Shown here: piece by piece, positions 13,903 through 64,000 of the stretch
Layout of the letters: each line of letters opens with the position of its first letter
Numbering within the stretch: position 1 is the stretch's first letter
Program-made: the position numbers and the translations under genes
Notes under the pieces: model-generated
What the model was told of the DNA's origin: nothing
Seen by the model: only the letters and a program-made list of their open reading frames with translations
The model's database searches: none
DNA from: Rebecca billardiae RCC1528
Taxonomy: Eukaryota > Protista > Haptophyta
Assembly (NCBI GenBank): GCA_965240325.2
Contig: OZ251230.1
Location: forward strand, 1,302,001-1,366,000
Length of the DNA: 64,000 nucleotides
Direction of reading: 5' to 3'

Positions 13903-16119
13903 TCAGCGCGAGCGGCGGGCCTTCTTGGTGGCTGGCGCCGCGCCGCCGTTCGCTGCATCCCCTCCGGCCGCAGGCTTGGCGCCGCGGCGCTGCTTCACCG
14001 CGGCGGCCAGCTCGTCGAGCGCCTTCCGCGTCGCGTCCCAGTCCACGCACGGGTCGGTGATCGACACGCCGTGCTTGAGGCCCTTCAGCCCGGTGGCGGC
14101 GCTCGACTCGTCGAGCGGCGGCACCGGCTGCGCGCCCGCGGCGAGGAACGACTTGAGCACCACGCCCGACACCGCCATGCTCCCGCCCGCCACGCGCTCG
14201 GCGACGCGCTTGACCGCGCCCAGCTGGTCGGCGTCCGCCGAGCAGTCGACGACCATCGACGGCGGCAGCCCGGCCGCGGTGAGCTGCGCGACCATCGCGT
14301 CGACGTGCGCGTCACCCTCGACGATTGCATGGCAGTCGTCGTTGCCCGTGGTGTGCACGACGCCCGCGACGCCCTGCTTGGACACGCCGATGAACGGGTG
14401 CGAGCGCGCGGCGGCGAGGATCGCATCCACCGCCGCGGCGCCTCCCGCCGCGCTCGGCGCCTCAAACCCCACCGGCATCGACAGGCCTGAGGCGAGCTCG
14501 CGGTGCAGCTTGGACTGCGCCGAGCGCGAGCCGATCTGCGCCCACGAGACGAGGTCGGCGAGGTACTGCGGGATGGTGGTGTCGGCGAACTCGCACGCGA
14601 CGGGCAGGCCGAGCTGGTTCACGGCCTGCAGCAGCTCGCGCGCGGTGTGCAGCCCTTTGTTCACGTTCAGCGAGCCGTCAATGTCCGGGTCCATCACGAG
14701 GCCCGTCCACGCCGACGCTTCGGGCGCGGCGTATGCGCACCGCAGCAGCACGAGGAGCTCGCCAGCGTGCGCCTTGGCCGCGTCGGCGAGCCGCGCGGCG
14801 TACTGCAGCGTGGCGTCGACGTCGTGCAGCGTGCACGGGCCCACGACCACGAGCATCCGCGCGGCGCTCGCGCCGCCCTTGGCCTTGGCGCCGCCGCGCA
14901 CGAGCTGCTGCACGCCCTTGCGCGTCGCGGTGACGAGCGAGGCCACGTGCCCCGAGTGCGGCAGCTCCTCCTGCAGGCACGCGGCGGGGACGATGGCCTG
15001 CACGCCGCGGATGCGCAGGTTGTCGGTGGGGAGCTGCGTGTTCGACTCGCGGAACAGCGTGCTCGCCGGCTCAGCCGCCGCGCTGCTCGTCGCCGTCGGC
15101 TTTGCGTCGGGCGTCGCGCGCCGCCGCTTGACCGCATCGGCGAGCGCGCTGAGCGACGTGAGCGTGTCCGACCAGTCGAGGCACGCGCCGGCGATGGACA
15201 TGCCGGCGACGAGCTCACGCGGCGAGGAGCCGGCGCCGACGGGGGGCGGCTGCGCGCCGGAGACGAGGAACGACTTGAGCACCACGCCCGACACCGCCAT
15301 GCTCCCGCCCGCCACGCGCTCGGCGACGCGCTTGACCGCGCCCAGCTGGTCGGCGTCCGCCGAGCAGTCGACGACCATCGACGGCGGCAGCCCGGCCGCG
15401 GTGAGCTGCGCGACCATCGCGTCGATGTGCGCGTCGCCCGCGACGGTGGCGTGGCAGTCGCGGTTGCCCGTGGTGTGCACGACGCCCGCGACGCCCTGCT
15501 TGGACACGCCGATGAACGGGTGCGAGCGCGCGGCGGCGAGGATGGCGCCCGACGCATCGCCGAGCGTGCCGCCCGCGGCCGTGCTCGCCGCGAAGCCGAC
15601 GGGCATCGAGAGGCCCGAGGCGAGCTCGCGGTGCTGCCGAGAGGCCGAGCCGACCTGGCCCCAGGAGACGAGGTCCGCGATGTACTGCGGCACGATCGCG
15701 TCGGCGAACTCGCAGCCGACGGGCACGCCGGCACCGTTGACCGCGAGGAGCAACGAGCGGATCGCGCGCAGCCCCTTGTTGATCTTGAGCGAGCCGTCGA
15801 GCTCGGGGTCCATGACGAGGCCGCGCCACTCGGAGCTGTCTGGTGCGGCGTAGCTGCAGCGCATGAGGATGACGAGCTCCTCCGCGTGCGCCTTCGCCGC
15901 CTCGGCGAGCCGGCGCGCGTACTCGAGCGTCGACTCAGCGTCGTGTATGGTGCACGGGCCAACGACGACGAGCAGTTTGTGGCCGTGCGAGCGCACGGCC
16001 TCGCGGCCGGCGAGAACGGTGGCCGCCGCCTCCTGCGTGTACGGCGAGCCCTCGATCACGCATGATGCCGGCAGCAGCGGGCGCAGCTCCGCGACACGGC
16101 CGTCCTCGAGCGCCGACAT
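13903..16119 (-). CDS. Tandem two-domain class I-alpha DAHP synthase homologue, probably catalytically inactive
   Basis: Two copies of VVVGPCT(I/L)HD, W.GLVMDP..DGSL..NKGL, EFAD...PQY.ADLVSW, HRELASGLSMPVGF, HTTGN.DCH, G.SI...C.DW; catalytic KPRT, GFKN, LRGG, SHANS and ES motifs altered. Confidence 0.9.
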   Translation of the reverse strand: MSALEDGRVAELRPLLPASCVIEGSPYTQEAAATVLAGREAVRSHGHKLLVVVGPCTIHDAESTLEYARRLAEAAKAHAEELVILMRCSYAAPDSSEWRGLVMDPELDGSLKINKGLRAIRSLLLAVNGAGVPVGCEFADAIVPQYIADLVSWGQVGSASRQHRELASGLSMPVGFAASTAAGGTLGDASGAILAAARSHPFIGVSKQGVAGVVHTTGNRDCHATVAGDAHIDAMVAQLTAAGLPPSMVVDCSADADQLGAVKRVAERVAGGSMAVSGVVLKSFLVSGAQPPPVGAGSSPRELVAGMSIAGACLDWSDTLTSLSALADAVKRRRATPDAKPTATSSAAAEPASTLFRESNTQLPTDNLRIRGVQAIVPAACLQEELPHSGHVASLVTATRKGVQQLVRGGAKAKGGASAARMLVVVGPCTLHDVDATLQYAARLADAAKAHAGELLVLLRCAYAAPEASAWTGLVMDPDIDGSLNVNKGLHTARELLQAVNQLGLPVACEFADTTIPQYLADLVSWAQIGSRSAQSKLHRELASGLSMPVGFEAPSAAGGAAAVDAILAAARSHPFIGVSKQGVAGVVHTTGNDDCHAIVEGDAHVDAMVAQLTAAGLPPSMVVDCSADADQLGAVKRVAERVAGGSMAVSGVVLKSFLAAGAQPVPPLDESSAATGLKGLKHGVSITDPCVDWDATRKALDELAAAVKQRRGAKPAAGGDAANGGAAPATKKARRSR
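14142..15543. repeat. Internal 280-bp near-identical direct repeat (14142-14421 and 15264-15543)
   Basis: Offset 1122 bp; differences confined to a short central patch. Confidence 0.92.
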
Positions 16120-16593
16120 GATTGAGTGAAGCACGTGGACGCCCGAAATTACTTCGCCGACTGAGAACCCGCGCGCCAAAAAAACTTTTTGCGCTGTCCT
16201 CGTCGCCTGCCGCGAGCCCGCGACCAAGCCGCACTGGCAGCCGCACCCCTGCCGCAACCAAGCTGAAAGCGACGGCTCGCTCTGGAACTCGGGAGCAAGG
16301 GCCTTGTCGGGAGGACGGGAGAGGCGCTGGCGCCAAAAGGCGCGATTTGCTATTTCATCGACGAAACTTGCTCCCCTTACCCCGTTCGCCTAGGCTGGCG
16401 GTTCATCAATCGAAGGAACTCATAGTTAGTGAATAGTGCCGCAGTGTTCGGAATATGACGGTCACAAAGCCTTCGCGCGCTTCGAGAGCATCTCGCCGGG
16501 GCGTGCCCGCTGCGCACGCAGCGTTGTGTGCTCGAGCCCGCCGACGAAGAAGCAAGAGCCACCCACCCACGCTGACCTGCAACGCGCCGCGCG

Positions 16594-27493: not shown

Positions 27494-27658
27494 CAACCAA
27501 AACTTTACGGTTACCCATCCTGGTACTCATTCGGTTACCCTCATTCCTCATTGTCCATTTGATCTACGGCCGTGTCCCCGCCGATTTGAGATTCAAGATT
27601 CCCCAAAAGCTCCAGACCGCAACCAGCTCATCATAAAATCCTATGGGGGTGTATGGGG

Positions 27659-27708
27659 GTACAGTTTGCTAAGAATAAGAGACGCACACAGCTCAGGCAG
27701 GCGAGATT
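27659..27708 (+). repeat. Dispersed ~50-bp repeat, copy C
   Basis: GTACAGTTTGCTAAGAATAAGAGACGCACACAGCTCAGGCAGGCGAGATT. Confidence 0.85.
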
Positions 27709-27825
27709 GTATCCAGGAAACGTCCGGGGATTTATGATTTGCTGGAACCCGGCCTTGCCCGGAAACATCGTCTCGCCGCAATCGGCACCACGTTCGCCTC
27801 GCGTCGGCTTTGGGGTTGAGCCGGC

Positions 27826-30384
27826 ATGCTCGCGGCACGGCGGGTTGGCGTCGCGCTGGCGACGTGGTCCGTTCTCGGCAGCGCATCCGTGCTCCTGGCC
27901 GGTATCGCGCTGCTGAGACGCATCCCACCCGCCCACACGATCGCGCTCACGAGCTTGGAAGGCACGGCGTGCATGATGAGTGCGACCGTGTTTGCGACAA
28001 CGTGCTTCACGCGGGTGCTTTCGACCATGGTGCGTGGAACCTTCACGTGGACGCACGCCGATGTCGTCGTCTTCGGCGTCAACCTTCTCTCTGCCGTCGC
28101 GAGCGCTCTGCTCGCCAGCACGCCCGTCGTCGCGTTTCGCGATCCGTACACCGGCTACCGCATGGTGCCTTTGCGCTGGCTGAGCTGGTGCACCTCGCTC
28201 TTCCTGCACATGCTCGCGATGGAGGGCGTGGCGAACGAGCGCGCGCCCCGCGCGCTCAGCGTCGCCCTCACGCACGCCGCCAGCGTCGCCATCGGCGCGT
28301 TCCTGCCGTTCGCGCCGTCGCTCAGCGTGTGGTGCGTCACGCTCGTGTACGCGCTGCTCGCGCTCTCGTCGCTGTACGTGCGCGCGGCGCAGCGGCTGCG
28401 CGAGCCGAAGGCGCGGCTGCCGCCGGAGAAGCTGGTGCAGCAGCACGTGCTGCGCATCACCTGCGCGTGCGCCCTCCTCTGGCCGCTCTTCCTCCTCTCG
28501 TACGCGGCCGCCGCCGTCTCGCGCGCATCGGACCAGAGCCACTTTGTTGCCGAGTGCTTGCTGGACGCGCTCGTCAAGCTCGTGGTGGCGACGTGCATGA
28601 GCGAGGTGCACGTGGGCGCGCGCATGATGGCGGAGCACAACGCGCACAAGGAGCTGCAGCGCCAGATGAAGCTCGCCTGGGAGCACGCCTCCGACACGCT
28701 GCTCGTCTCGCAGGCGCTCGACACGACCCGCCACCGCTCCGCGCGCGTGCACTCGGTCGCCTCGCTGTCGATCGTGCACCTGATGAGCGAGCGCGCGGCG
28801 CACAAGTGGCTGTGCGGGCACTACCACGAGCTGGATCTGGAGACGCCGGTCGAGACGCAGCGCGAGAGCCCGGGCGGCGCGCACGCGTCGCCGCCGCCGA
28901 CGGGCGGCGCGGCCGATCGGGGCGCGGGCGGCCGCCGCGCCGCGAACGGCGGCGACGGCGGCGGCGGCGGCGGCGACGGCGAGGCGGCGGCAGACGCCGC
29001 GGCCGAGCGCGACGTGCTGCACATCCTCACCCTGGCGTGGCAGCATGGCATGTCATCCTTCGAGTGCACGCTCACCTCCGGCAGCCTCATCGAGTGCGAG
29101 GTCCGCGTGACGCAGGCGGTGGACGAGCACTACCTCGTGGTCGTGATGCGAGACGTCACCGAGCGCGAGCGCGCGCGCCGCGACGAGATGGAGCGGCTCG
29201 AGCGGACGATCTCGAAGCGCAAGGACGAGGAGGCGAACCGCTTCACGCGGCACAAGGTGAAGAACTCCGTCCTCTCCGCGATCGCGGTCTGCGACGAGAT
29301 GCTCGACTCCGGCGTGCGCGACCAGCGCCTCGCGCGGCTGCACAACCTGCTGAACGCGACGCTGCACACGATCGGCTCGGTCACGGTCGCGCGCGACGTG
29401 GTCAACGGCATGTACACGCCCAAGGTGGAGCCGGTGCGGCTGGACTCGGTGTTCGCCGACTCGCCCGGCGTCAACGTGCGCATCTCGGACGAGTCGGCGC
29501 AGTGCGTCTCCTCCGACCGCTGGATGCTCCACTTCATCTACCACAACGCGCTCTCGAACGCGGTCAAGTACGGTGCGGACGCTGACGTCGACGTGCGCGT
29601 CGCCGCGTGCGACGGCCGGCTGCAGTTCGAGGTGGAGAACAAGCCCGGCGCGAACCACGCGGTGCTGCGCGCGCTCGAGGACCCGACCACCGTCTTCAGC
29701 AAGGGCACGCGCTTCCACGACTCGGGCGACAGGTCCGCGGGCGACGGCGCGTGGATCGCGGAGAAGTGCGCGCACGCTCTCAACGGCTCGGTCTCCATCA
29801 CCTTTGACGAGCGCTCGACCACGTTCGCCTTCGACGCGCCGATGGCGGCGTGCACCGAGCAGCTCGAGTCCGTCTCGTTCGAGGTGCCGCAGGACTGCAT
29901 CGCCGTCGGCATCGACGACGACCCGGTGCAGCGCATGCTCCTCGGCGTGATGCTCTCCTCGCAGCTGCGCATCTCGAACGAGCGCGTGCACATCCTCGGC
30001 GACAACGACGACCTGTGCGTGCTCAAGGAGCTGCTCGTGCAGATCGTGCGCAACGCGCCCGCGCGCGTGCTCATCCTGTGCGACGAGAACCTCGACGTGG
30101 GCACGCCCACGCGCTTCGTCGTCTCGGGCTCGCTGTGCCTCAAGGAGGTGCTCCAGGAGCTCGGCGAGGCGGACGCGGCGCGCGTGCTCGGGCTCGTGCG
30201 CTCGGCAAACGACGGCGACGCGGACGTGCTGTGCTACCTCCAGCGCGTGCACGGCTTTGTGCCCAAGCTGCCGCTCAGCGCGGACGAGCTGCGCAAGCTG
30301 ATCGCGCACGCGTGGTCCAACCGCTTCGTCGACCACGGCTCGTGCGACTCCTCGTTCGACCGCCGCTACAGCCTGAGCGCGTGA
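27826..30384 (+). CDS. Hybrid histidine kinase with N-terminal microbial-rhodopsin-like 8-TM domain, PAS-like region, HisKA, HATPase and receiver
   Basis: LRWLSW (helix C-like), LLDALVK (helix G DxxxK), VMRDVTER (PAC end), RHKVKN H-box, NALSNAVKYG N-box, GDGAWIA G2, IDDD / LCDEN / PKLP receiver motifs. Confidence 0.88.
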   Translation: MLAARRVGVALATWSVLGSASVLLAGIALLRRIPPAHTIALTSLEGTACMMSATVFATTCFTRVLSTMVRGTFTWTHADVVVFGVNLLSAVASALLASTPVVAFRDPYTGYRMVPLRWLSWCTSLFLHMLAMEGVANERAPRALSVALTHAASVAIGAFLPFAPSLSVWCVTLVYALLALSSLYVRAAQRLREPKARLPPEKLVQQHVLRITCACALLWPLFLLSYAAAAVSRASDQSHFVAECLLDALVKLVVATCMSEVHVGARMMAEHNAHKELQRQMKLAWEHASDTLLVSQALDTTRHRSARVHSVASLSIVHLMSERAAHKWLCGHYHELDLETPVETQRESPGGAHASPPPTGGAADRGAGGRRAANGGDGGGGGGDGEAAADAAAERDVLHILTLAWQHGMSSFECTLTSGSLIECEVRVTQAVDEHYLVVVMRDVTERERARRDEMERLERTISKRKDEEANRFTRHKVKNSVLSAIAVCDEMLDSGVRDQRLARLHNLLNATLHTIGSVTVARDVVNGMYTPKVEPVRLDSVFADSPGVNVRISDESAQCVSSDRWMLHFIYHNALSNAVKYGADADVDVRVAACDGRLQFEVENKPGANHAVLRALEDPTTVFSKGTRFHDSGDRSAGDGAWIAEKCAHALNGSVSITFDERSTTFAFDAPMAACTEQLESVSFEVPQDCIAVGIDDDPVQRMLLGVMLSSQLRISNERVHILGDNDDLCVLKELLVQIVRNAPARVLILCDENLDVGTPTRFVVSGSLCLKEVLQELGEADAARVLGLVRSANDGDADVLCYLQRVHGFVPKLPLSADELRKLIAHAWSNRFVDHGSCDSSFDRRYSLSA

Positions 30385-50790: not shown

Positions 50791-53700
50791 CTAACTTTGG
50801 TGTCGCCGGTTGCTCTGCGCCAATGGCATGCCGGAGAGCGCTGCCACCGCGGGCCCCGCTCCTGCTCCGGGCACCCCTCCAGAGGGTGCGAGCGCGAGCA
50901 CCGCTGCGGGCAGGCGGGGTGCGGCAGCGCCGTACGCCTTGGCCGTCGCATCCGCACTGCGGCTCGAGCACGTCGGCCCCGCTGCCCGCCGCGCCTGCAG
51001 GCTGGGCGCGGCGTGCGCGCCGCACGGCTGGGCGGGGAGCGGACCAGCTGCCGACGCCGGCGCCGCCGCCGCCGCGGCCACGGGTACCGCTGGCCTTGGC
51101 GCACGATGCGCGCCCGCCGCGTACTGTGCCGCGCGCCTGTGCGCGTGCGCGGTGGAGGCCGCTGCAGCCGCAGGCGGCGGCGGCGTGCGTGGCGCGACGA
51201 GCTGTAGAGCTGCCAGCTGCTGCAGCCGCTCATGAAGCTGCGCCCTTGGGCTCTGGACAGCCCCCATGGCGGATCCGGCCCCCGCCGCCGCCGCCGAGCA
51301 CGCTCGGAGCACGCGCGAGCGCGCCGCCGGCGTGCTGAACGCCGAGTCGGCCTCCGCCTCAGCCTCGGGGCCGAGCCCTTCTTGCGATTCCGAGGCCGCG
51401 GCGCGCTCGGCGGCGGCAGCGCCCGCGGCGCGCTCGCCCGCGGCGCCCTCAGGCGTGGCCATGGCGGCGGTGGCCGCTGCCGGCGGCAGCGCCGTCCCTG
51501 CGAGCGCGCCGTGGGAGGACCGGTGCAACCGCTGTGCGGCGGCTGCAGGCATCGCACCGCGGGGCGGCGAGGCCGCGTCAGCGGCGTCGGTGGCGCCAGC
51601 GGCGTCGGCTGTGCCGCAATGCGCCGCGCCCGCTCGCCACGCCGAAGTCGGCGAGGGCAGCGTCGGCGGCGCCACCCCACCCGGCGGCGGCGGCGGCGCG
51701 CGCTGCGCCGCCGCCTCCGCCTCGGCCGCGGCCGTGGCGGCGGCTGGCGGCGCCGGTCTCGATCGGAGCTCGACCAGCACGGACAGCTCGGCCTCGAGCT
51801 GGACGATGCGCGCGTGCAGCGCGGCGCGCTCGTCGACGGCCGCGAGCGCGTCCGCCTCGCGCGCCGCGTCGCTCGCCGCGCGCGCCGCCTCGGCCTGCGC
51901 CAGAGCCGCCGCCGCGGCCGCGTGCTCGGCGGCGGCAGCGTCCGCGGCCGCGCTGGCATCGGCCGCGCCGCGCAGCGCGCTGGCGAGCTGAGAGCGGAGT
52001 GAGTCCGCCTCGGCGCTGAGCGACTCGTCCAGCTCGTCGGCGCGCGCGCGCGCCTCGCGCACCTCGCGCGCGCTCGCCTCCTCCGCCGCCGCGGCGCGCG
52101 CCGCCGCCGCCGCCTCGGCCTGCGCCGCGCGCGCGCGCAACGCCTCCTCCGAAGTGGCGCGCTGCCGTTGCGCCAGGGCGCGCTCGGCGGCGCGCTCGTC
52201 CTCGGCGGCGCGAAGCTGGGCGCGGAGCGCGTCGCACGCGCGCTCGAGCTGCTCCGCGCGCTCCTGCGCCGCCGCGGCCGCCGTCGCGTGCGCGCCCAGC
52301 TGCGCCGCGAGCGCGGGCGCGCGCTCAGCCGCGTCGGCCGCCGCGCGCGCCGCGCCGTCCGCCGCGGCCGCGGCCGCGCTGCCGAGCGCATCCGCGGCGC
52401 GCTGCGCCTCCGCGAGCTGCGTCGCGAGCGGCGCGGCGGCGTCGAAGGCGGCGAGCGCGGCGCGCTCGGCGGCGAGCCGCCCGGCCGTCGCCGCGTCGCG
52501 CTCCGCGCGCGCCTCAACGCACGCCGCCTCGGCGCGCGCCGCGTCCGCGTCGCGCGCCGCCAGCGCCGCGACGGCTTCATGTGCGGCGCGCGCGGCGACG
52601 GCTGCGGCGGCGCGCAGCTCCGCGGCCGCGGCCTCGGCGGCCTTGGCGCGCTGGTCGGCCTCGCGCTCGGCGTCGGCCGCGCCGCGCGCGCGCGCCTCCG
52701 CCGCCGCGACGCCCTCCGAGCGCGCGCGCTCCGCCGCCGCCGCGCGCGTCTCCGCCGCCTCCGCCTCCGCGCGCGCCGCCGCCTCGGCCGCGCGCGCGCG
52801 ATCCGCCGCGGCGTCGGCCGCCGCGCACGCCATGCGCGCCGACGCCGCGTCGTGCGCGGCGGTCTCGGCGAGGGCGTGGGCGCGGGTGCGCTCGGCCGCG
52901 GCGGTGGAGAGCGCGTCCGACGCCGCCGCGGCGCGCGCCTCCGCCTCCACCGCGCGCTGCTCCGCCTCGAGCGCGCGCCGCTCGGCCGCGGCCGCGCGCG
53001 CCTCAGACGCGGCCGCGGCCGCGGCCGCGCGCGCCGCGCGCGCGGCCGTGGCTTCGGCCTCCTCCTCGGCGGCGAGGCGCGCGGCGAGCGCGGCGGCGGC
53101 GTCGGCCTCGGCGTGCGCGACCTCCGCCTGCGCCGCCGCCGCGCTCGCCTCCGCCCCCGCCCTCGCCTCCGCCGCGCCGCGCGCCTCCGCCTCCAAGTCG
53201 GCCGCGCGCGCCGCCCATAGCCCGTGCTCAAGAGAGGCCTGTCGCTGAGACTCGTGCGCACCTGCCTGGGTGTCCTCTGCGGCGCGGAGGGACTCGGCGG
53301 CGCGCGCGCGCGCGTCGGCGGCGGCGGCGGCGTGTGCGGACGCCTCGGTGCGCCACGCCTCCGCCTCGCTCCGGGCGTCCGCCGCCTCCGCCGCCGCCGC
53401 CGCCGCCGCCGCCTCCGCGGCGGCCGCGCGGCCGTCGGCACGCGCGCCGTCCGCGGCCGCCGCCTCCGCGCGCGCGCTCGCGTGCGCCGCCGCTCGGACC
53501 GCCGCGCTCTCGCCCTCGCGGGCGGAGGCCGCGTCGGCGCGCGCCCGGCGCGTCGCGCCCTCGAGCCGCCCCACCTCCGCGTCCGCGTCCGCCAGCGCAT
53601 CCCGCACGCACCCCACCGCCACCAGCGCCGCCGAGCGCTGATCGAGCGCGCTCGCCGCCGCCGCCTCCGCGGCGCGCGTGTCGGCATGCAACGCACTCAG

Positions 53701-55020
53701 CCGCGCGCCGAGCACGCGCGCCGCCTCGTCGCGCCGGGCGTCGGCGGCGTCGGCGAGCGCGTCGGCGCGCGCGCGCGCCTCGGTCGCCTCGCGCTCGCGC
53801 GCGCTGCTCGCCGCCGCCTCCTCCAGCGCGCGCCGCGCCACGCCCCGCGCCCGCTGCTCCAAGCGCTCGGACTCGCCGAGCGAGCCAAGCGCGCACGCGC
53901 GCTCGGCGCGCGTGCGCGCGTGCGCCGCGCGCTCGGCGGTGAGCGCGCGCGCGACGTGGAGCGCGGCGTCGCGCGAGGCGTCCGCGTCCTCGAGCGCGCC
54001 GCGCAGCGCGTCGCGCTCCACGCACGCGCCGAGCCCGCGCGCCGCGCTCTCCTGCGCCCGCTGAAGCTGGAGCCTTAGGCTGTCAGCGTCTGCGCGCGCG
54101 GACGCGGCGTCGGCGCGCACGCGCGTGCGCTCCGCGCGCGCAGACGCGTCGGCGTCGGCGGCGCGGCCGAGCTCGCGCTCGGCCGCGTCCGCCACGCTCC
54201 GCGCCGCCTGCGCGCGCCGCCGCGCCTCGCCCAGCTCCGCCTCCGCCGCGCTCAGCTCGTCGCGCACAGCGCTGAGCTCGGCGCGAGCGCGCGAGGCCGC
54301 GCCCACGCCCGTGGCGCCGGCCGCGCGCGCGCGCGCCGCGTCCGCCTCGGCGCGCTCGCGGGCGAGGCGCTCCTCCTCGAGCGCGTCGAGCAGCGCATCC
54401 CGCTCCTCGGACGCCCGCGCCTCCAGCTCGGCGTGCGCGCCGCGTGCACTGCGCGCCTCGTCCCGCGCCGCGCGCGCAGAGGCATCTGCGCTCGCGGCTG
54501 CGCGGCGCGCCTCGCCCACCGCGGCGGCGGCGCGTGCGGCCGCCTGCTCGACGAGCGGCAGCGCGTCAGCAGGCAGCCCGAGCTCCGCAGCACGCGCAGG
54601 GAGGGCCCTGCGCAGCGCCTCGAGCTGCGCGCGCAGCTGATCGGCCTGCGCGTCGCTGGCTGCCTTGGCCGCCTGCGCCGACTCGATCGCAGCCTGCAGC
54701 GCCGCGAACCGGCGCCGAGAGGCCTCGCGCGCCGTGGAAGCGCGCCCGCCGATGCCTGCGTGCTCGGCCGATCCGACGAGCTTCTCCAGCCCATCGGACG
54801 CGAGCGAGGCCAGCTCCGCCTGCAGGTGCTCCGCGCGGCGCTCGGCCTCGCGACGAGCGCGCCGGTGCTGCTCGCCCGCCGCGCGCGCGGCCGTGAGCGC
54901 ATCGCGGGTCGAGCCGAGCTGCAGCTCGGCATCAGCGAGGCGGCGCGGTAGCGCGTGGACGTCCGCCGCCTCGCGCTGTGCTCGACGCACCGCCGCCCCC
55001 GCGGCGCCCGCCGTGCTCAT
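50791..55020 (-). CDS. Very long Ala/Glu/Arg-rich coiled-coil protein
   Basis: About 1400 codons open from ATG 55020; helical A/E/R/L composition, unlike the Arg/Pro shadow frames. Confidence 0.75.
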   Translation of the reverse strand: MSTAGAAGAAVRRAQREAADVHALPRRLADAELQLGSTRDALTAARAAGEQHRRARREAERRAEHLQAELASLASDGLEKLVGSAEHAGIGGRASTAREASRRRFAALQAAIESAQAAKAASDAQADQLRAQLEALRRALPARAAELGLPADALPLVEQAAARAAAAVGEARRAAASADASARAARDEARSARGAHAELEARASEERDALLDALEEERLARERAEADAARARAAGATGVGAASRARAELSAVRDELSAAEAELGEARRRAQAARSVADAAERELGRAADADASARAERTRVRADAASARADADSLRLQLQRAQESAARGLGACVERDALRGALEDADASRDAALHVARALTAERAAHARTRAERACALGSLGESERLEQRARGVARRALEEAAASSAREREATEARARADALADAADARRDEAARVLGARLSALHADTRAAEAAAASALDQRSAALVAVGCVRDALADADAEVGRLEGATRRARADAASAREGESAAVRAAAHASARAEAAAADGARADGRAAAAEAAAAAAAAEAADARSEAEAWRTEASAHAAAAADARARAAESLRAAEDTQAGAHESQRQASLEHGLWAARAADLEAEARGAAEARAGAEASAAAAQAEVAHAEADAAAALAARLAAEEEAEATAARAARAAAAAAASEARAAAAERRALEAEQRAVEAEARAAAASDALSTAAAERTRAHALAETAAHDAASARMACAAADAAADRARAAEAAARAEAEAAETRAAAAERARSEGVAAAEARARGAADAEREADQRAKAAEAAAAELRAAAAVAARAAHEAVAALAARDADAARAEAACVEARAERDAATAGRLAAERAALAAFDAAAPLATQLAEAQRAADALGSAAAAAADGAARAAADAAERAPALAAQLGAHATAAAAAQERAEQLERACDALRAQLRAAEDERAAERALAQRQRATSEEALRARAAQAEAAAAARAAAAEEASAREVREARARADELDESLSAEADSLRSQLASALRGAADASAAADAAAAEHAAAAAALAQAEAARAASDAAREADALAAVDERAALHARIVQLEAELSVLVELRSRPAPPAAATAAAEAEAAAQRAPPPPPGGVAPPTLPSPTSAWRAGAAHCGTADAAGATDAADAASPPRGAMPAAAAQRLHRSSHGALAGTALPPAAATAAMATPEGAAGERAAGAAAAERAAASESQEGLGPEAEAEADSAFSTPAARSRVLRACSAAAAGAGSAMGAVQSPRAQLHERLQQLAALQLVAPRTPPPPAAAAASTAHAHRRAAQYAAGAHRAPRPAVPVAAAAAAPASAAGPLPAQPCGAHAAPSLQARRAAGPTCSSRSADATAKAYGAAAPRLPAAVLALAPSGGVPGAGAGPAVAALSGMPLAQSNRRHQS

Positions 55021-55182
55021 CCGTGCACGACGCGCATGCGTGCTCTCCGCTTTCAATCGTGCAGCTCTCGAGCCGTCGAGGCAGCTCAACCGGCCAGTGC
55101 TTCCGGCCCGGACCAGAAGACTGCGTCCGGTGAGGGCGGGACGGCACCGGCCCCAGCCGCCTGGCTCGCCGGGCGCCCGGGC

Positions 55183-56454
55183 ATGTCGCAGGGGCGGAAT
55201 GCAGGGCTCAGGCGATACCCACCGGGTCCTCGGACCGACTTCAGCTTCGATCCGCACCCCTCCAGCGCGCCGCGGCTGCGGAGCAACACGCAGATGCAGA
55301 AATCCGCCCTGCGCATGCTGTGCTGCGGCGCGTGCGTGGTCTCCATCATTGCCTTTGTCGCGCTGAGCTCACCGCCGCAGGGCCAGAACGCGTGGCTCTC
55401 CTTCGACTTGTGCCCGCAGCGCCCGAGCCAGCCGGGCGTGATCGACTGGGTCTCGGTCGCGCTGGCTGACGGCGAGCAGTGCCCGCCCGAGCCCCTGCCC
55501 GCGCCGTCGACCATGACCGTTGAGCGCGAGCACTTCCCAACGTATGGCGGCGTGTTCGGCCGCGGCTCGTACAGCTTCTTCGTGAAGGTCGCGCGGCCGT
55601 CGTTCACCTCGGGCGAGCTCACCTTCTCGATCGCCTCGGCCCGCGGGCACACGCTCCTAGCGCCGACGACCGAGTCGCTGCTCTACCTCACAGACTCGGC
55701 CGTCGCGTGCAACGCGAGCACGGACGCGCTGTGCGAGCGCGTCGACGAGACGGTCGTCGACGCGGGCGTGGAGGCGGCGCAGCGACGCCGGCTGCTCACG
55801 CGCGAGCGGGCCCGGCCGAGCGCGTTGCTCGAGCCGGGGGGGCGACCCCCGACCGCGCGCGTGCTGCTCAAGGCCGGCGCTGGCGGCGGCGCCGGCGGCA
55901 CACGAGGCTTTGCTGGCGGCGCGGGCGGGCGAGGTTGGATCTCCTCGCATGCGACCCCGCAGGCGCGTTGGATTCACGCGCGCACAGGCCCGGGCGGCTT
56001 CCCCGGCGCGTACCACGCCACGCCCACGCGGCTGACGCGGGCGCACGTCTTCTCCGCAGGCGCAGTCTTCCTCCTCCTGCACCACGGCAACCGCGGCGGC
56101 TTCACGGCGCAGCACTCGCGCGAGGCGCGCACCAACGTCGGCGTCGACGATTTCCTGGAAACTTCCTTCGATGTGGAGGCGGCGGACTTCCCGCTGCGTT
56201 TCGAGCTGCACTCGGCCGTGCTGCGCGTGGGCGGCTCCTCCGCAGCTGCCGGCGCGGCGAGTGCGGATGCTACCGCGCCCACGCCGACGGATGCCGGGCA
56301 GAGGCGCCGGGCGCTCAGCGCCGACAGCGCTGAGGGCGCCGTTGGCGCTGGCAGCACCAGCCCAGTGCCTCTTGGCGCCGTACGGCCACTGCTGGGTAGC
56401 AACGTCGTCGTGCCGCCGCCACTGCTGCTCTTCGGCTTTGAGCAGCTGCCATGA
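55183..56454 (+). CDS. Hypothetical membrane-anchored protein
   Basis: ORF with hydrophobic MLCCGACVVSIIAFVAL and beta-rich globular segments; start uncertain (55183 or 55294). Confidence 0.62.
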   Translation: MSQGRNAGLRRYPPGPRTDFSFDPHPSSAPRLRSNTQMQKSALRMLCCGACVVSIIAFVALSSPPQGQNAWLSFDLCPQRPSQPGVIDWVSVALADGEQCPPEPLPAPSTMTVEREHFPTYGGVFGRGSYSFFVKVARPSFTSGELTFSIASARGHTLLAPTTESLLYLTDSAVACNASTDALCERVDETVVDAGVEAAQRRRLLTRERARPSALLEPGGRPPTARVLLKAGAGGGAGGTRGFAGGAGGRGWISSHATPQARWIHARTGPGGFPGAYHATPTRLTRAHVFSAGAVFLLLHHGNRGGFTAQHSREARTNVGVDDFLETSFDVEAADFPLRFELHSAVLRVGGSSAAAGAASADATAPTPTDAGQRRRALSADSAEGAVGAGSTSPVPLGAVRPLLGSNVVVPPPLLLFGFEQLP

Positions 56455-60563: not shown

Positions 60564-63071
60564 TCAGCACATCTCCAGCACCGCTGCAGTTGGTCCCACG
60601 CCTGACGAAGATGATGGGGCCGATCGCTCGGCCGCCGTCGTGATGAGTCGTCCACGTGCCGGGCTCGGGTGTGCTGGTCGACCGCTCCGCGGTGGGAGCG
60701 CCAACGCGTCTGTCCGCACGTCGCGCGGCTGCGCACCTGCCAGCCGGCGGTCGGCGGGCCCGGTGCCCTCGTCGGCGCGCGCCTCCGCTGCCACTGCTGG
60801 CGCCGCGCCACTCACGTCGGAGCGCCGGAGGCATGCCGCCTCGGCGGCTCCGTGCGCCGGCGCGCTGAGCCACAGCTCAACCGCGGGTGGCATGGCGGGC
60901 GTGCCGGCTGAGGTGAAGCACGCCTGGCCGGCGGCGTCGCGTGCGTCGCGCCTGGGCATGCACGCGCGCAGAGTGCCCAGCATGCGTCCGCCGCGGAGCG
61001 CCGTGTGCGCTGCGAGCACGGCCGCGACGACGACGAGCGCCGCGGCTCCCAAGAGCAGCGCCGCTGGGTGTGCCGCCACGAGACGCTCGAGCGAGGGCGC
61101 GCCCGATCGCGCGGGCGACTCCACCGCCAGCGCGCCTGCGCCCTGCCTGCCGTCGCAGAACATGGCGAGGGCGTACACGAGCGCCGCCTGCCAGTTGATG
61201 GCGACCTCGTTGGTCGCGTACGCGAGCTTGTCGTCCGTCCAGTCGGCCGCGCTCGGCCACGGCCCGCCGACGAGGAGGAATGGCCACGGGCGGTGCTCCG
61301 CCATCGACGGGCGGTGGTGCGGGTTGTTCGGCGGCGCGTTCCCAATGTGCGTCACGTACGAGCGCCCGTAGTCGTTCGCGCCGAGGAGGTGCGCCAGCCC
61401 GAGCGCGGCCGCTGACTCGTACCGCTCGGCGCGCTCCGCGTCGCCGTCGGAGCGCCGCGCGCGCGCGAGGCGCGTGGCCGCGTGCAGCGTGAGCGCCTGG
61501 CGCGCGATCGCGCCGTTGACGCCCCACTTGTACCGGCGGCCGACGGTGCGGCCGTACGGGTGCTCGATCGCCGCGTCGGCGATCGCGTCCGCCACGCCGA
61601 GCAGCACCCGCTCCGTGCGGTGCCGCAGCGCGCGGTCCTGCAGCGGCGCCGCCGGCCGCACGTCGCCAAGCAAGTACCGGAAAGTTCCGAGGGTCGTCAT
61701 CGAGGACCAGTCGAAGATCGGCTCGACGGGGCAGCGCGCGGAGGCGTACTTCTCGCGCTTGGGGTCGAGGTCGGCGCACTCCTCCTCCGGCGCGTCGAAC
61801 GTGCGCAGCAGCGCCTCCGTCTCCACCCAGTACGCGCCGTCACCCGTCGTCTGCCAGAGCTCGGCCGCAGCCCACAGCGACGCGCCCGCGAGGTGCGTCG
61901 GCGACTCCGAGTCGTACGTGCCCGTCTTGAAGACGCCCTGGTACGGCGGCACGGCGGTGGATGCGTTCGAGTGCTCGCGCAGCCACGCGTGCGCCGCCCT
62001 CGCCGCGCGCACGCACGCGTGCGCGAACGGCGCGTCGTGCGGCGCGAACGCGCGAGCGCCCATCGCCGCGACCGCGGCGAGCGACGCGGTCGCAATGGAC
62101 GAGGGCGGCGCGAGGAAGCGCTCGAGCGTGTCCGCGGCGGGCCTGACCTGGAGGTCCTCGAACTCGGTGGGCGTGAGCTTGTGGTACACCGCGCCGTCCT
62201 CGCGCTGCATCGTCAGCACCCACGCCAGGCCCCACCGCACCTCGTCGAGGAAGCGGGGCGTGCCCGGCACCGCGAGCGGCGGGAGGCTCGAGTTGGTCGC
62301 AGACAGCGAGCGCGCGATCGCGTCGCCAAAGTGCTCGTGCGCGAGGAGCAGGTTGCCGATGGAGAAGGCCGTGTTCACCGTGTACTTGCCGTAGTCGCCG
62401 GCGTCGTGCCACCCGCCCGCGGCCGAGAACGCGTGCGCCGGCCCCTCCTCGCGCGTGTGCGCGCGGTCGACGGTGCCGTCGTGCGCGTGGCACGCGCCGT
62501 GCCCAAATGACTCGCCGTCGCGCGCGATGATCGGCCCGATGGCGACGCCGCAGCGCGCCAGCGTGAAGCTCTCGACGGCGCCGCGCAGGGGCTCGTGGAA
62601 CACGTCGTCCGCCACGACGAACGGCACGGACCACACCACGTGACCCAGCCGAACGCGCACCGCCTGCAGAATGTACGTGCCGGGCGCCCGCAGCTCGGAG
62701 AAGTCTGCGATCCACGTGAGCCGCCCCATGTCCGAGTGCTGCGACGACTTGACCCAGTCGCCGCTCAGGACGACGTCGTCGGCCAGGCAGCGATACGCCT
62801 GGTCGCCGAGCTCGGGGACGCCCCAATGGCAGTGCCGCACCTTCCAGTGAACAGGCTCGCCGTAGAAGCGCGAGAACGGGATGGACGCGCGCTTCGTCTG
62901 CGCGGGCGTGTACCCGACTGAGTTGAGGCGCACGTCCGGGCCGGGGACGCTCGCCCACGGCAGCCAAAACGCACGGCTCCCGTCCACGAGGAGCGCCACT
63001 ACCACCACCGCCAGTCGCCCCGACCAATTCCGGCGGAGCGGCGGGTGGTGAAGTCCAGCGGCGGCTCCCAT
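60564..63071 (-). CDS. GH9 endoglucanase with N-terminal Ig-like domain, signal peptide and C-terminal TM anchor
   Basis: RLNSVGY.P...K, ADFSELRAPGTY, GGWHDAGDYGKY, LLGAN...SYVT..G....PHHRPS, YATNEVAINWQA; ATG 63071. Confidence 0.93.
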   Translation of the reverse strand: MGAAAGLHHPPLRRNWSGRLAVVVVALLVDGSRAFWLPWASVPGPDVRLNSVGYTPAQTKRASIPFSRFYGEPVHWKVRHCHWGVPELGDQAYRCLADDVVLSGDWVKSSQHSDMGRLTWIADFSELRAPGTYILQAVRVRLGHVVWSVPFVVADDVFHEPLRGAVESFTLARCGVAIGPIIARDGESFGHGACHAHDGTVDRAHTREEGPAHAFSAAGGWHDAGDYGKYTVNTAFSIGNLLLAHEHFGDAIARSLSATNSSLPPLAVPGTPRFLDEVRWGLAWVLTMQREDGAVYHKLTPTEFEDLQVRPAADTLERFLAPPSSIATASLAAVAAMGARAFAPHDAPFAHACVRAARAAHAWLREHSNASTAVPPYQGVFKTGTYDSESPTHLAGASLWAAAELWQTTGDGAYWVETEALLRTFDAPEEECADLDPKREKYASARCPVEPIFDWSSMTTLGTFRYLLGDVRPAAPLQDRALRHRTERVLLGVADAIADAAIEHPYGRTVGRRYKWGVNGAIARQALTLHAATRLARARRSDGDAERAERYESAAALGLAHLLGANDYGRSYVTHIGNAPPNNPHHRPSMAEHRPWPFLLVGGPWPSAADWTDDKLAYATNEVAINWQAALVYALAMFCDGRQGAGALAVESPARSGAPSLERLVAAHPAALLLGAAALVVVAAVLAAHTALRGGRMLGTLRACMPRRDARDAAGQACFTSAGTPAMPPAVELWLSAPAHGAAEAACLRRSDVSGAAPAVAAEARADEGTGPADRRLAGAQPRDVRTDALALPPRSGRPAHPSPARGRLITTAAERSAPSSSSGVGPTAAVLEMC

Positions 63072-63315
63072 CGTGGATCCCGATCCCGACGACGGTTTCA
63101 ACCTTTCAGGGGCGACGCACAATAGATTACCCGGGCTCGATATGAGTCGCGTGCTCGATTCATATTCAAGCACGTCTTGGCCTCGGTCCGGCGGCGGCGG
63201 CAGACATTGATCAAGCCGAGCGGGAGGGACGCATTTTTGGTGCTGCAGGCTGGGGACAACAGCATCAGGGCGCTTCACGGCCGCGCGCCCTTGGAGGGCG
63301 CTTGGCGTGGGCACG

Positions 63316-64000
63316 ATGCTGCGGGCTCCAGGTGATCGGGTAGCTCCATTCGGCGAGATCGTCCCCGGCTCGCCTCGGTCGCGTCTCTCGCCGAGCAAAC
63401 GAGTGCGCGCGGGCGCTCGCGCGCGTGTGCGATCCGCGCTCGTGTGCACTCGCTGCGCGTGCAGCGCAGCCCTGGCGCGTGTGGTGGGACGGCCGCGTCG
63501 GCGGATGGGGCGTGCGTCTGAGCGCCATCGTCGCCCGTGCCGCCCTCGCCTGCGCGCGCGCGGCGCGCCCTCGCCGCGCAGCGCGAGGAGGCGCTGATTG
63601 CGGCCGAGGGCACGCGGCTGGCCTTCTCGCACAACCAGCGGCTCAACGCGCCGATCAACGGGCTGGTGACGAACCGCACGTCGACGGCGAAGTACACGTA
63701 CTGGAACTTTATCCCGAAGAACCTCTTCGAGCAGTTCCGCCGGCTCGCCAGCTTCTACTTCCTCGTGGTCGGGCTGATCCAGGCGACGACCAACCTGTCG
63801 CCGACCGGCAAGTGGACGACGCTGCTGCCGCTGTGCTTCGTGATCTCGCTCAACGCGATCCGCGAGCTGTTCGAGGACGTGAAGCGGCACCGCTCCGACC
63901 GGCTCGACAACTCGCGGCGCACGCAGGTGCTGCGCGACGGCCAGCTCAACACGATCGCGTGGCAGCTCGTGCAGGTGGGCGACATTGTGGTCGTGAGCGA
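63316..64000 (+). CDS. P4-type ATPase (phospholipid flippase), 5' part; probable intron 63403-63581; runs off window
   Basis: NRTSTAKYTYWNFIPKNLFEQFRRLASFYFL, PLCFVISLNAIRELFEDVKRHRSD, W..VQVGDIV. Confidence 0.92.

What the first reader, a model, noticed from the sequence alone, without database searches (positions are those of the whole stretch)
27826..30384. 8-TM microbial rhodopsin fused to PAS, histidine kinase and receiver: candidate light-sensing two-component receptor
Seen: residues 1-265 contain eight hydrophobic segments. They include a hairpin-like loop followed by R117-W-L-S-W121, a helix with LLWPLF, and D247-A-L-V-K251, then a split PAS/PAC, HisKA (H476), HATPase and receiver (D753). 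Known: bacteriorhodopsin has R82-Y-A-D85-W86 in helix C and D212-x-x-x-K216 (retinal Schiff base) in helix G, and enzyme rhodopsins carry an extra N-terminal helix. Inference: this is a retinal-binding kinase rhodopsin with Ser at the D85 counterion site. It has a PAS and no cyclase, unlike the best-studied chlorophyte histidine kinase rhodopsins, so it may be a separate, poorly described family.
Basis: partly seen in the sequence, partly recalled or inferred. Interest (0 to 1): 0.88.

Follow-up and report, generated by a model that had tools for sequence, protein, structure and literature searches.

The report
Hidden rhodopsin–PAS–histidine kinase photoreceptor gene
This intact, intron-free gene of a very GC-rich haptophyte-type alga most likely makes a vitamin-A (retinal) light sensor welded to a bacterial-style signalling kinase; it is an unusually divergent member of an algal family that standard domain searches do not recognise and that I found described in no paper.

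Summary
Window 27826-30384 (+) is one 852-codon ORF with a strong coding signature (GC3 0.96) and lower-GC flanks. Residues 1-262 fold as an 8-helix microbial rhodopsin. The closest solved structure is the Salpingoeca rhodopsin phosphodiesterase, extra helix TM0 included (VIA Z 23.7; family profile E 1.5e-8). A long helix follows, then a PAS domain split by a disordered Gly-rich insert, a DHp/CA histidine kinase (H476) and a (beta-alpha)5 receiver (D753).

An exhaustive search found 47 distant relatives (at most 31% identity), from pavlovophyte haptophytes, diatoms and metagenomes, all unnamed. In them the Schiff-base Lys (K251) is kept in 43 of 43 and R117 in 48 of 48. Long members share the PAS-kinase-receiver tail, and half add an HPt-like domain that this gene lacks. 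Pfam sees only HATPase_c.

This copy has the longest branch in the family tree. It has Ser for the usual Glu at the D85 site, and His, Val and Pro at other conserved positions.

Best reading (about 0.65): a retinal-binding, light-regulated hybrid histidine kinase. It is a new variant of the enzyme rhodopsins, not a canonical HKR. Nothing biochemical was tested. Earlier reports of this scan describe at least six paralogous genes (and two further first-reader notes) elsewhere in the same genome.

The parts
27826..30384 (+). Whole gene: single-exon ORF of 852 codons plus stop (stop at 30382-30384)
   Evidence: GC3 0.958 and lower-GC flanks
27829..27915 (+). TM0 (residues 2-30), the extra N-terminal helix typical of 8-TM enzyme rhodopsins
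   Evidence: AF2 helix 2-30. VIA alignment to Rh-PDE starts at model residue 1 and chain residue 50, which is the TM0 of Rh-PDE (PMC7644710)
27952..28611 (+). Seven-helix rhodopsin core, TM1-TM7 (residues 43-262), with a beta-hairpin at about 99-114
28174..28188 (+). TM3 motif R117-W-L-S120-W121. R117 is invariant. S120 sits at the BR D85 / Rh-PDE E164 site, where the family has Glu in 42 of 48
28207..28209 (+). H128 codon, at the position equivalent to BR L93. The family has Met in 44 of 48, and His is unique to this gene
   Evidence: the mapping by constant offset from R82/R117 is inference
28564..28578 (+). TM7 motif D247-A-L-V-K251: the counterion Asp and the Schiff-base Lys
   Evidence: K in 43 of 43 and D/E in 40 of 43; aligned to D292/K296 of Rh-PDE
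28612..28683 (+). Helical linker continuous with TM7 (residues 263-286), ending in the family-invariant W285
   Evidence: AF2 helix 236-286; family alignment
28684..29160 (+). PAS-like domain (residues 287-445), ending in RDVTER
   Evidence: DSSP strands. The fold matches PAS-DHp-CA kinases such as YF1 4gcz, VicK 4i5s and WalK. The sequence hit to PAS 3bwl is only weak, E 0.03
28852..28974 (+). Disordered Gly/Ala-rich insert inside the PAS domain (residues 343-383)
   Evidence: pLDDT about 30; variable length in all relatives; GC3 stays at 0.98, so it is probably coding rather than an intron
29161..29403 (+). DHp helical hairpin (residues 446-526), with phospho-acceptor H476 (codon 29251-29253) in FTRHKVKNSVL
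29404..29853 (+). Catalytic ATP-binding (CA) domain (residues 527-676): N-box HNALSNAVKYG, VENKPG, SAGDGAW
   Evidence: Pfam HATPase_c scores 29.7 bits against a cut-off of 26.4; profile against PDB histidine kinases gives E 1e-6
29893..30327 (+). Receiver domain (residues 690-834): D697/D698, D753 (codon 30082-30084), S793, K814
   Evidence: (beta-alpha)5 in DSSP, with the quintet residues at strand ends. These residues are invariant in 13 of 13. Sequence hits are weak: CheY E 0.088, and Response_reg in 2 of 13

Best explanation
The gene encodes a membrane photoreceptor kinase. An 8-helix (TM0 + 7TM) microbial rhodopsin binds retinal through a Schiff base at K251, with D247 as counterion. Light-driven isomerisation moves TM6/TM7. 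TM7 runs on as a long helix into a PAS domain and from there into the DHp helices of a dimeric histidine kinase, so that light changes autophosphorylation at H476. The phosphoryl group passes to D753 of the fused receiver. This copy has no HPt or effector domain, so onward transfer would need a separate HPt protein or response regulator; alternatively the receiver acts as a sink or interaction switch. The protein belongs to a family (rhodopsin-PAS-HK-REC, with or without HPt) found in haptophytes and diatoms. Its nearest characterised relative is the Rh-PDE type of enzyme rhodopsin. Shown here: the ORF, fold, domain order, conservation of the catalytic and chromophore-binding residues, and family membership. 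Inferred: retinal binding, light regulation, its sign, and the phosphorelay partners.
For: 1. Rhodopsin fold. The N-terminal model has pLDDT 90.7. By Foldseek the top hits are Rh-PDE 7d7q/7cj3 (E 5e-6), followed only by microbial rhodopsins. By VIA, Rh-PDE gives Z 23.7, rmsd 3.3 A and 254 aligned residues from model residue 1, so TM0 is included; 7-TM rhodopsins give Z about 20. The protein-language-model search gave 58 of 60 nearest clusters carrying Bac_rhodopsin.
2. Sequence. The family profile matches Rh-PDE at E 1.5e-8 over all 8 helices. In that alignment R-W-x-E-W pairs with R-Y-A-E164-W, and D..K with D292..K296. The query alone hits Synechocystis halorhodopsin at E 0.009.
3. Constraint. 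K251 is kept in 43 of 43, R117 in 48 of 48, W121 in 46 of 48, W169 in 47 of 48, W219 in 44 of 44, and D/E247 in 40 of 43. This is the pattern expected of a retinal pocket.
4. Kinase. HATPase_c scores above the Pfam cut-off. The profile hits solved histidine kinases at E 1e-6. H476, N574, G608 and D753 among others are invariant or nearly so in 13 full-length members. The full-length model matches PAS-DHp-CA(-REC) kinases such as YF1, VicK, WalK and ShkA. The kinase and receiver are as conserved as in any relative (34.9% and 34.1% mean identity).
5. Tolerance of Ser120. In Rh-PDE the equivalent Glu164 is permanently protonated and Asp292 is the sole counterion (PMC7644710). The 3.45 carboxylate is also absent in five relatives (S in two, A in two, Q in one), all of which keep D/E at 247.
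6. Intact gene. GC3 is 0.958, there is no stop, and the flanks are intergenic-like.
Against: 1. No experiment and no expression evidence exist. No sequencing run was listed, and the exact product is not on record.
2. Pfam Bac_rhodopsin does not hit this protein, and hits only 2 of 48 relatives weakly.
3. The rhodopsin domain of this copy is the most divergent in the family. Its end branch is 3.32 against a median of 0.76, and its mean identity is 21.7% against the family's 26.2%.
4. It departs from near-invariant family residues that probably line the pocket: E120S, M128H, Y254V and T/S220P. Loss or change of chromophore binding is therefore more plausible here than in typical members.
6. PAS, DHp and receiver are recognised by fold and motifs but only marginally by sequence profiles.
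7. Retinal biosynthesis in this organism was not examined.
Confidence: 0.65

Rival explanations
1. Photo-inactive or re-purposed paralog. The opsin-like domain of this copy no longer binds retinal usefully. It serves as a membrane anchor or dimerisation module, or senses something else such as voltage, pH or a lipid, while the PAS-kinase-receiver part stays functional.
For: It has the longest terminal branch in the family. Its rhodopsin domain is the least conserved, while the kinase and receiver are normally conserved. It has substitutions at near-invariant positions: E120S, M128H (unique), Y254V (unique) and T/S220P (unique). Lys-bearing but non-electrogenic or unexplained rhodopsin homologues are known in algae (PMC8818676, PMC7714340).
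Against: K251, D247, R117, W121, W169, W219, G157, P161 and D106 are all retained, which is hard to explain without selection on the chromophore site. The fold is predicted with high confidence. Ser at the D85 site occurs in working rhodopsins, and the equivalent Glu is not the counterion in Rh-PDE (PMC7644710). GC3 of the rhodopsin part is still 0.91.
Confidence: 0.18
2. It is simply a divergent member of the already known histidine kinase rhodopsins (HKR/2c-Cyclop lineage). On this reading it descends from the same ancestral rhodopsin-kinase fusion, with a PAS inserted and the cyclase lost, so it is nothing new in kind.
For: It has the same general logic of 8-TM opsin, then HK, then REC (PMC6284317). 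HKR-like fusions outside green algae have been reported in Thecamonas (PMC6324907) and in Guillardia clade C (PMC7714340). A recent sequence network distinguishes 'canonical' and 'noncanonical' HKR clusters and 17 uncharacterised clusters (PMC13739731). An earlier report of this scan (s1-341020) read a paralog this way.
Against: The only significant solved-structure sequence relative of the family profile is Rh-PDE; no HKR structure was available to compete. Canonical HKRs have the kinase directly after the opsin and mostly carry a cyclase (PMC6284317), whereas here a PAS intervenes and half the relatives end in an HPt-like domain. The H-box (R-H-E-V-K-N) gave no Pfam HisKA hit. In the language-model search, the full-length protein's nearest clusters are bacterial PAS hybrid kinases, not HKR clusters. 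No phylogeny with HKR sequences could be made, so this remains open.
Confidence: 0.3
3. It is a spurious ORF or pseudogene of a GC-rich genome.
For: Many long overlapping ORFs occur in this 70% GC window. No transcript evidence was found.
Against: GC3 is 0.958 in this frame, against 0.68 for the antisense ORF. There is full-length homology to relatives, with the C-terminal half at E down to 3e-69. All catalytic residues are intact.
Confidence: 0.02

Closest known systems
Rhodopsin phosphodiesterase (Rh-PDE) of Salpingoeca rosetta (PDB 7cj3, 7d7q)
   Same: It has the 8-TM topology with TM0, and it is the best structural and sequence match. It shares the R-[YW]-x-E-W and D-x-x-x-K motifs, the aromatic residues W121/W219/F222 (W165/W264/F267 in Rh-PDE), a non-carboxylate at the BR D96 site, and TM7 continuing into a helical linker towards a cytoplasmic enzyme.
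   Different: The output is a PAS-histidine kinase-receiver, not a phosphodiesterase. Identity is only about 12%. This copy has Ser instead of Glu164. It comes from an alga, not a choanoflagellate.
[quoted passage not shown]
   Same: Both have an 8-TM opsin followed by a histidine kinase and a receiver in one chain. In 2c-Cyclops light regulates phosphotransfer, by inhibition (PMC6284317).
   Different: Here a PAS domain lies between opsin and kinase, there is no cyclase, and there is no 500-residue spacer. The H-box is of the R-H-E-V-K-N type and gives no Pfam HisKA hit. The rhodopsin part escapes Pfam PF01036. Relatives often end in an HPt-like domain. The direct sequence relationship was not tested.
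PAS-linked sensor histidine kinases (YF1/LOV-HK 4gcz, VicK 4i5s, WalK, bacteriophytochromes)
   Same: They share the PAS, coiled-coil, DHp and CA arrangement, and are the best fold matches of the cytoplasmic part. The RDVTER junction between PAS and DHp is also shared.
   Different: The photosensor here is an upstream membrane rhodopsin. The PAS shows no flavin or bilin motif and is presumably a transmitter only, and it carries a 41-residue disordered insert.
Sensory rhodopsin-transducer-CheA systems of haloarchaea
   Same: A rhodopsin controls a histidine kinase phosphorelay.
   Different: In those systems the rhodopsin, transducer and kinase are separate proteins, the rhodopsin is 7-TM, and there is no PAS.

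Membership tests
Microbial (type-1) rhodopsin | Seven-helix rhodopsin fold | tested here: met
   All top Foldseek and VIA hits are microbial rhodopsins, at Z 20-24
Microbial (type-1) rhodopsin | Schiff-base lysine in TM7 | tested here: met
   K251 aligns to Rh-PDE K296 and is kept in 43 of 43 relatives
Microbial (type-1) rhodopsin | TM3 arginine and carboxylate counterions (BR R82, D85, D212) | tested here: inconclusive
   R117 and D247 are present, but the D85 site is Ser120. One carboxylate is enough in Rh-PDE (PMC7644710)
Microbial (type-1) rhodopsin | Match to Pfam PF01036 Bac_rhodopsin | tested here: not met
   There is no hit at E up to 1, and only 2 of 48 relatives hit weakly
Microbial (type-1) rhodopsin | Covalent retinal and a photocycle | not testable with these tools
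   Needs expression with retinal and spectroscopy
8-TM ('type Ib') enzyme rhodopsins | Extra N-terminal helix TM0, giving a cytoplasmic N-terminus | tested here: met
   Helix 2-30 superposes on TM0 of Rh-PDE and of bestrhodopsin
8-TM ('type Ib') enzyme rhodopsins | Cytoplasmic enzyme domain fused after TM7 | tested here: met
   PAS-DHp-CA-REC follows TM7
Canonical HKR / 2c-Cyclop | Histidine kinase directly behind the opsin | tested here: not met
   A PAS domain of about 160 residues intervenes, whereas PMC6284317 describes the kinase directly behind the opsin
Canonical HKR / 2c-Cyclop | C-terminal guanylyl cyclase | tested here: not met
   The protein ends 17 residues after the receiver, and there is no cyclase or HPt elsewhere in the window
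Canonical HKR / 2c-Cyclop | Rhodopsin and kinase domains group with HKRs in a phylogeny | not tested
Hybrid histidine kinase | H-box histidine, N/G boxes of the ATP-binding domain | tested here: met
   H476, N574, the 605-608 NKPG and the 637-643 SAGDGAW are conserved. HATPase_c scores above its cut-off. PDB histidine kinases are hit at E 1e-6
Hybrid histidine kinase | Receiver with the acidic pocket DD/D, S/T and K | tested here: met
   D697, D698, D753, S793 and K814 lie at the strand ends of a (beta-alpha)5 fold and are invariant. Sequence-profile support is only marginal
Rhodopsin-PAS-HK-REC(-HPt) family of haptophytes and diatoms (unnamed) | Full-length collinear homology | tested here: met
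   It aligns end to end with 12 long members, with the C-terminal half at E up to 3e-69 and the N-terminal part at 1.8e-10
Rhodopsin-PAS-HK-REC(-HPt) family of haptophytes and diatoms (unnamed) | C-terminal HPt-like domain (LHxLKGD) | tested here: not met
   It is absent here and nowhere in the window. It is present in 6 of 12 long relatives

The most novel reading that the evidence does not exclude
The gene belongs to an undescribed fourth class of enzyme rhodopsin. These would be 8-TM rhodopsin-PAS-histidine kinase-receiver (with or without HPt) photoreceptors that are widespread in haptophytes and diatoms yet invisible to Pfam-based photoreceptor surveys. This particular paralog, with Ser at the D85 site and a unique His at the L93 site, would be a spectrally or kinetically specialised variant within a multigene set that gives the alga several light channels feeding one phosphorelay.
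Probability: 0.45. Interest if true: 0.8.

Novelty: new variant of a known kind. Interest (0 to 1): 0.66.

Why it matters
Diatoms and haptophytes carry out a large share of ocean photosynthesis. Current photoreceptor inventories for them are built on Pfam rhodopsin domains, for example the method quoted in bioRxiv 10.64898/2026.09.29.755320. One open-ocean survey reported no rhodopsin-histidine kinase transcripts at all (PMC8017926). A family of rhodopsin-coupled phosphorelay kinases that these searches miss would add an unrecognised light-signalling route, and would supply new 8-TM enzyme rhodopsins for optogenetics. This copy offers natural variation at the counterion site (Glu to Ser) and at the site equivalent to BR L93 (Met to His). 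That makes it a ready-made test of how these residues set colour and signalling-state lifetime in the family.

Tried and rejected
1. The search for homologous proteins gave nothing in two runs, one with residues 1-285 and one with the 13-sequence full-length alignment. The word index evidently does not reach these distant relatives. The exhaustive HMMER search did.
2. The look-up of sequencing runs listed no run, so read laying was not used and there is no expression or splicing evidence.
3. The look-up of encoding contigs found no exact record of this protein or of a neighbouring TPR protein, so the genome could not be named. A relative (P0004) lies in Diacronema lutheri GCA_019448385.1, which has a similar GC of about 72%.
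4. Pfam at permissive thresholds found no HisKA, HisKA_2, HWE_HK, PAS or Hpt domain, and only a faint Response_reg in 2 of 13. My recollection that the R-H-x-V-K-N H-box resembles HisKA_2/HWE kinases is therefore untested.
5. An HMM of the relatives' HPt-like tail found nothing in any frame of the window.
6. The idea that the Gly-rich insert at 343-383 is an unspliced in-frame intron was considered. It is judged unlikely because GC3 stays at 0.98 and the relatives also have variable inserts there, but it cannot be excluded without RNA.
7. 'No relative lacks both carboxylates (120 and 247)' is true for 43 of 43. However, about 0.4 double losses are expected by chance, so this is not significant.
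8. The pairwise alignment to Synechocystis halorhodopsin placed the query's W219-P220 on BR Y185-P186. The family-profile alignment to Rh-PDE instead puts W219 on the W182-type Trp. I adopted the latter.
10. Luck et al. 2012 (PMC3501036) is not held.
Full report
WHAT IS THERE

The window is about 70% GC and full of overlapping chance ORFs, but this frame carries a strong coding signature. GC at codon positions 1, 2 and 3 is 0.68, 0.47 and 0.96, against a GC3 of 0.68 for the 471-codon antisense ORF that overlaps it. The flanks fall to 0.61 and 0.49 GC. I read it as a single-exon gene.

The neighbours are ordinary eukaryotic genes: a protein kinase, a TPR protein, a GH9 cellulase, a WD40 protein, a DAHP synthase, an MFS transporter and a DUF1765 protein. 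None has an evident link to this gene.

THE N-TERMINAL DOMAIN IS A MICROBIAL RHODOPSIN WITH AN EIGHTH HELIX

- Pfam does not see it. Only HATPase_c is reported for the whole protein.
- Alone against PDB sequences, residues 1-285 give one weak hit, Synechocystis halorhodopsin at E 0.009. That hit aligns R117-W-L-S-W on R-Y-I-T-W.
- A protein-language-model search put 58 of the 60 nearest clusters in Bac_rhodopsin.
- The exhaustive HMMER scan of 1.84 billion cluster representatives found 47 relatives. None was closer than 31% identity, and the best E-value was 1.8e-10.
- A profile of 22 of them matches the transmembrane domain of the Salpingoeca rosetta rhodopsin phosphodiesterase at E 1.5e-8 across all eight helices. 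ChRmine is a distant second at 5e-3.
- With the 48-row alignment, AlphaFold gives a confident model (pLDDT 90.7, pTM 0.86) of eight helices and a beta-hairpin before helix C.
- Foldseek returns Rh-PDE first (E 5e-6) and then only microbial rhodopsins.
- VIA-align gives Z 23.7, rmsd 3.3 A and 254 residues for Rh-PDE, aligned from model residue 1 to chain residue 50, which is its TM0. Bestrhodopsin also aligns from residue 1. The 7-TM rhodopsins align only from about residue 40, at Z about 20.

So the fold, the extra helix and the closest relative are all those of the 8-TM enzyme rhodopsins (PMC7644710, PMC6284317).

THE CHROMOPHORE-SITE RESIDUES ARE UNDER CONSTRAINT

In the 48-row alignment:

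| Position | Conservation |
|---|---|
| R117 | 48 of 48 |
| K251 | 43 of 43 rows that reach it |
| W121 | 46 of 48 |
| W169 | 47 of 48 |
| W219 | 44 of 44 |
| D/E247 | 40 of 43 |

The profile alignment equates D247 and K251 with D292 and K296 of Rh-PDE, and position 120 with E164. K296 carries the retinal in the crystal structure (PMC7644710).

THIS COPY IS THE ODD ONE OUT

- It has Ser at position 120, where 42 of 48 have Glu.
- It has His at 128, the BR L93 equivalent by constant offset in helix C, where 44 of 48 have Met.
- It has Val at 254, where 42 of 44 have Tyr or Phe.
- It has Pro at 220, where 40 of 44 have Thr or Ser.
- In a maximum-likelihood tree its end branch is 3.32 substitutions per site, against a median of 0.76. 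It falls outside the well-supported 27-row clade that holds the named diatom sequences. The 16-row remainder in which it sits includes the two named pavlovophyte sequences.
- Its rhodopsin domain averages 21.7% identity to the long relatives, against their mean of 26.2%. Its kinase (34.9%) and receiver (34.1%) are as conserved as anyone's.

This asymmetry is the main argument for the rival reading that the opsin part of this paralog has lost or changed its job.

Against that rival, every residue that defines the retinal site is kept. In Rh-PDE the Glu at this position is permanently protonated and Asp292 is the sole counterion (PMC7644710), so a Ser that can still hydrogen-bond D247 is a mild change. 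Five relatives have independently lost this carboxylate (S, S, A, A, Q) and all keep D/E247.

From textbook knowledge of bacteriorhodopsin, L93 contacts the retinal 13-methyl group and L93 mutants slow the photocycle. A His there could lengthen a signalling state. This is inference only.

THE CYTOPLASMIC PART IS A PAS-LINKED HYBRID HISTIDINE KINASE

The C-terminal 567 residues match twelve long relatives (871-1135 aa) at E down to 3e-69. The end-to-end alignment shows a fixed order:

1. TM7.
2. A helix ending in W285.
3. A PAS-like domain with a variable insert.
4. The RDVTER junction.
5. An H-box, consensus N-R-F-T-R-H-E-V-K-N-G-L-L (query F-T-R-H476-K-V-K-N-S-V-L).
6. An N-box, H-R-N-A-x-S-N-A-x-K-Y-G.
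7. V-x-N-x-P-G.
8. S-x-G-D-G-A-W.
9. A receiver with I-D-D-S..Q-R, D-E-N-L-D (D753), V-R-S-A-N-D and H-G-F-x-x-K.

The kinase profile hits solved histidine kinases (KdpD, WalK and others) at 1e-6.

The full-length AlphaFold model (pLDDT 76) shows the following:

- TM7 continuing as one helix to residue 286.
- A PAS-type sheet, at strands 290-297, 306-312, 332-336, 411-416, 422-430 and 436-443.
- A disordered insert at 343-383.
- Two DHp helices.
- An alpha/beta CA domain.
- A (beta-alpha)5 receiver with D697/D698, D753, S793 and K814 at the strand ends.

Foldseek matches this model to PAS-DHp-CA(-REC) kinases: WalK, the LOV kinase YF1, VicK, ShkA and phytochromes. The language-model neighbours of the whole protein are bacterial PAS hybrid kinases.

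By sequence profiles alone, PAS, DHp, receiver and the relatives' HPt-like tail are only marginal. That is why ordinary annotation calls these proteins hypothetical.

Six of the twelve long relatives end in an HPt-like domain with an invariant H-x-L-K-G. This gene stops 17 residues after the receiver, and no such domain exists in any frame of the window.

HOW IT MOST LIKELY WORKS

The model is by analogy with Rh-PDE, 2c-Cyclops and PAS-linked kinases. Retinal on K251 isomerises in light. Movement of TM6/TM7 is carried by the TM7-linker helix into the PAS dimer and the DHp bundle, and changes autophosphorylation of H476. The phosphoryl group then moves to D753. Further transfer needs an HPt in trans, possibly that of a paralog.

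The sign of regulation is unknown; light inhibits the kinase in 2c-Cyclops (PMC6284317). All of this is inferred from anatomy. None of it was measured.

COMPARISON WITH WHAT IS KNOWN

Reviews list three enzyme-rhodopsin families: HKR/2c-Cyclop, RhGC and Rh-PDE (PMC12558739, PMC13739731).

Canonical HKRs have the kinase directly behind the opsin, a long spacer, a receiver and usually a cyclase, and they are recognised as bacteriorhodopsin-like by domain tools (PMC6284317, PMC6324907). The present family differs by the PAS, the absence of a cyclase, the frequent HPt-like tail, an H-box not recognised as HisKA, and a rhodopsin domain that escapes PF01036.

Rhodopsin-kinase fusions outside green algae have been mentioned for Thecamonas trahens (PMC6324907) and Guillardia theta (PMC7714340). 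A 2026 sequence network lists 'noncanonical HKRs' and 17 uncharacterised clusters (PMC13739731). I therefore cannot exclude that members of this family sit unnoticed in such datasets.

Six full-text searches found no description of a rhodopsin-PAS-HK-REC family in haptophytes or diatoms. A plankton metatranscriptome survey reported no rhodopsin-histidine kinase transcripts (PMC8017926). The library does not cover most subscription journals.

The named sources of relatives are Diacronema lutheri and Rebecca sp. (pavlovophytes), and Corethron hystrix and two Entomoneis (diatoms). All are labelled hypothetical or uncharacterised.

I could not obtain HKR sequences, so whether the family is a side branch of HKRs or a separate fusion remains open.

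RELATION TO EARLIER REPORTS OF THIS SCAN

The scan's notes list at least eight other loci of the same kind in this genome, six of them with follow-up reports that reach the same family-level conclusion. This gene is therefore one more paralog of a multigene family. What is specific to it is the absence of introns and of HPt, and the exceptional divergence of its rhodopsin domain, including the Ser at the counterion-site position.

VERDICT

I class the gene as a new variant of a known kind, the enzyme rhodopsins. Its function is plausible but unproven, and there is a real chance (about one in five) that this particular copy is photo-inactive.

Noticed in passing
relatives P0043, P0041, P0026, P0040, P0044, P0019 (alignment A7): Six of twelve full-length relatives carry a C-terminal HPt-like domain of about 100 residues with an invariant H-x-L-K-G. 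The family therefore exists in two forms, one ending at the receiver and one with a complete one-chain phosphorelay. The match to the CheA P1 domain is only marginal (E 0.46).
   Followed up: partly
window 27631-29046 (-) and other overlapping ORFs: Long antisense and out-of-frame ORFs (up to 591 aa) overlap the gene. GC3 of the antisense ORF is 0.68, against 0.96 for the real frame, so they are by-products of the high GC content and not genes.
   Followed up: yes
window 28852-28974: A 41-codon Gly/Ala/Asp-rich low-complexity insert lies inside the PAS domain. It is disordered in the model, and it sits in a region of variable length in all relatives. An in-frame unspliced intron cannot be ruled out without RNA data.
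   Followed up: partly
window 50791-55257 (-) and 52001-54000: The stretch 52001-54000 reaches 85% GC, and it lies inside a 1488-codon ORF (50791-55257, - strand) with no Pfam hit. I did not look at what this is.
   Followed up: no
window 13906-16389 (-): An 828-codon ORF with high GC3 shows two stretches matching DAHP synthetase I (E 4e-76). This is the tandem DAHP synthase that another first-reader note describes.
   Followed up: no
window 60564-63887 (-): A large GH9 cellulase with a CelD_N Ig-like domain (E 4e-65).
   Followed up: no
literature (PMC8818676): A review notes that a rhodopsin sequence from Pavlova (Diacronema) lutheri, not homologous to channelrhodopsins, gave no photocurrent when expressed (Klapoetke et al. 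2014). It might be a member of this family, and if so a non-electrogenic result would fit an enzyme rhodopsin. I could not check this.
   Followed up: no
window 27826-28611 versus 28612-30381: GC3 of the rhodopsin-coding part is 0.91, against about 0.98 for the kinase and receiver parts. This is a small difference in codon bias within one gene, and it parallels the faster protein divergence of the rhodopsin part.
   Followed up: no
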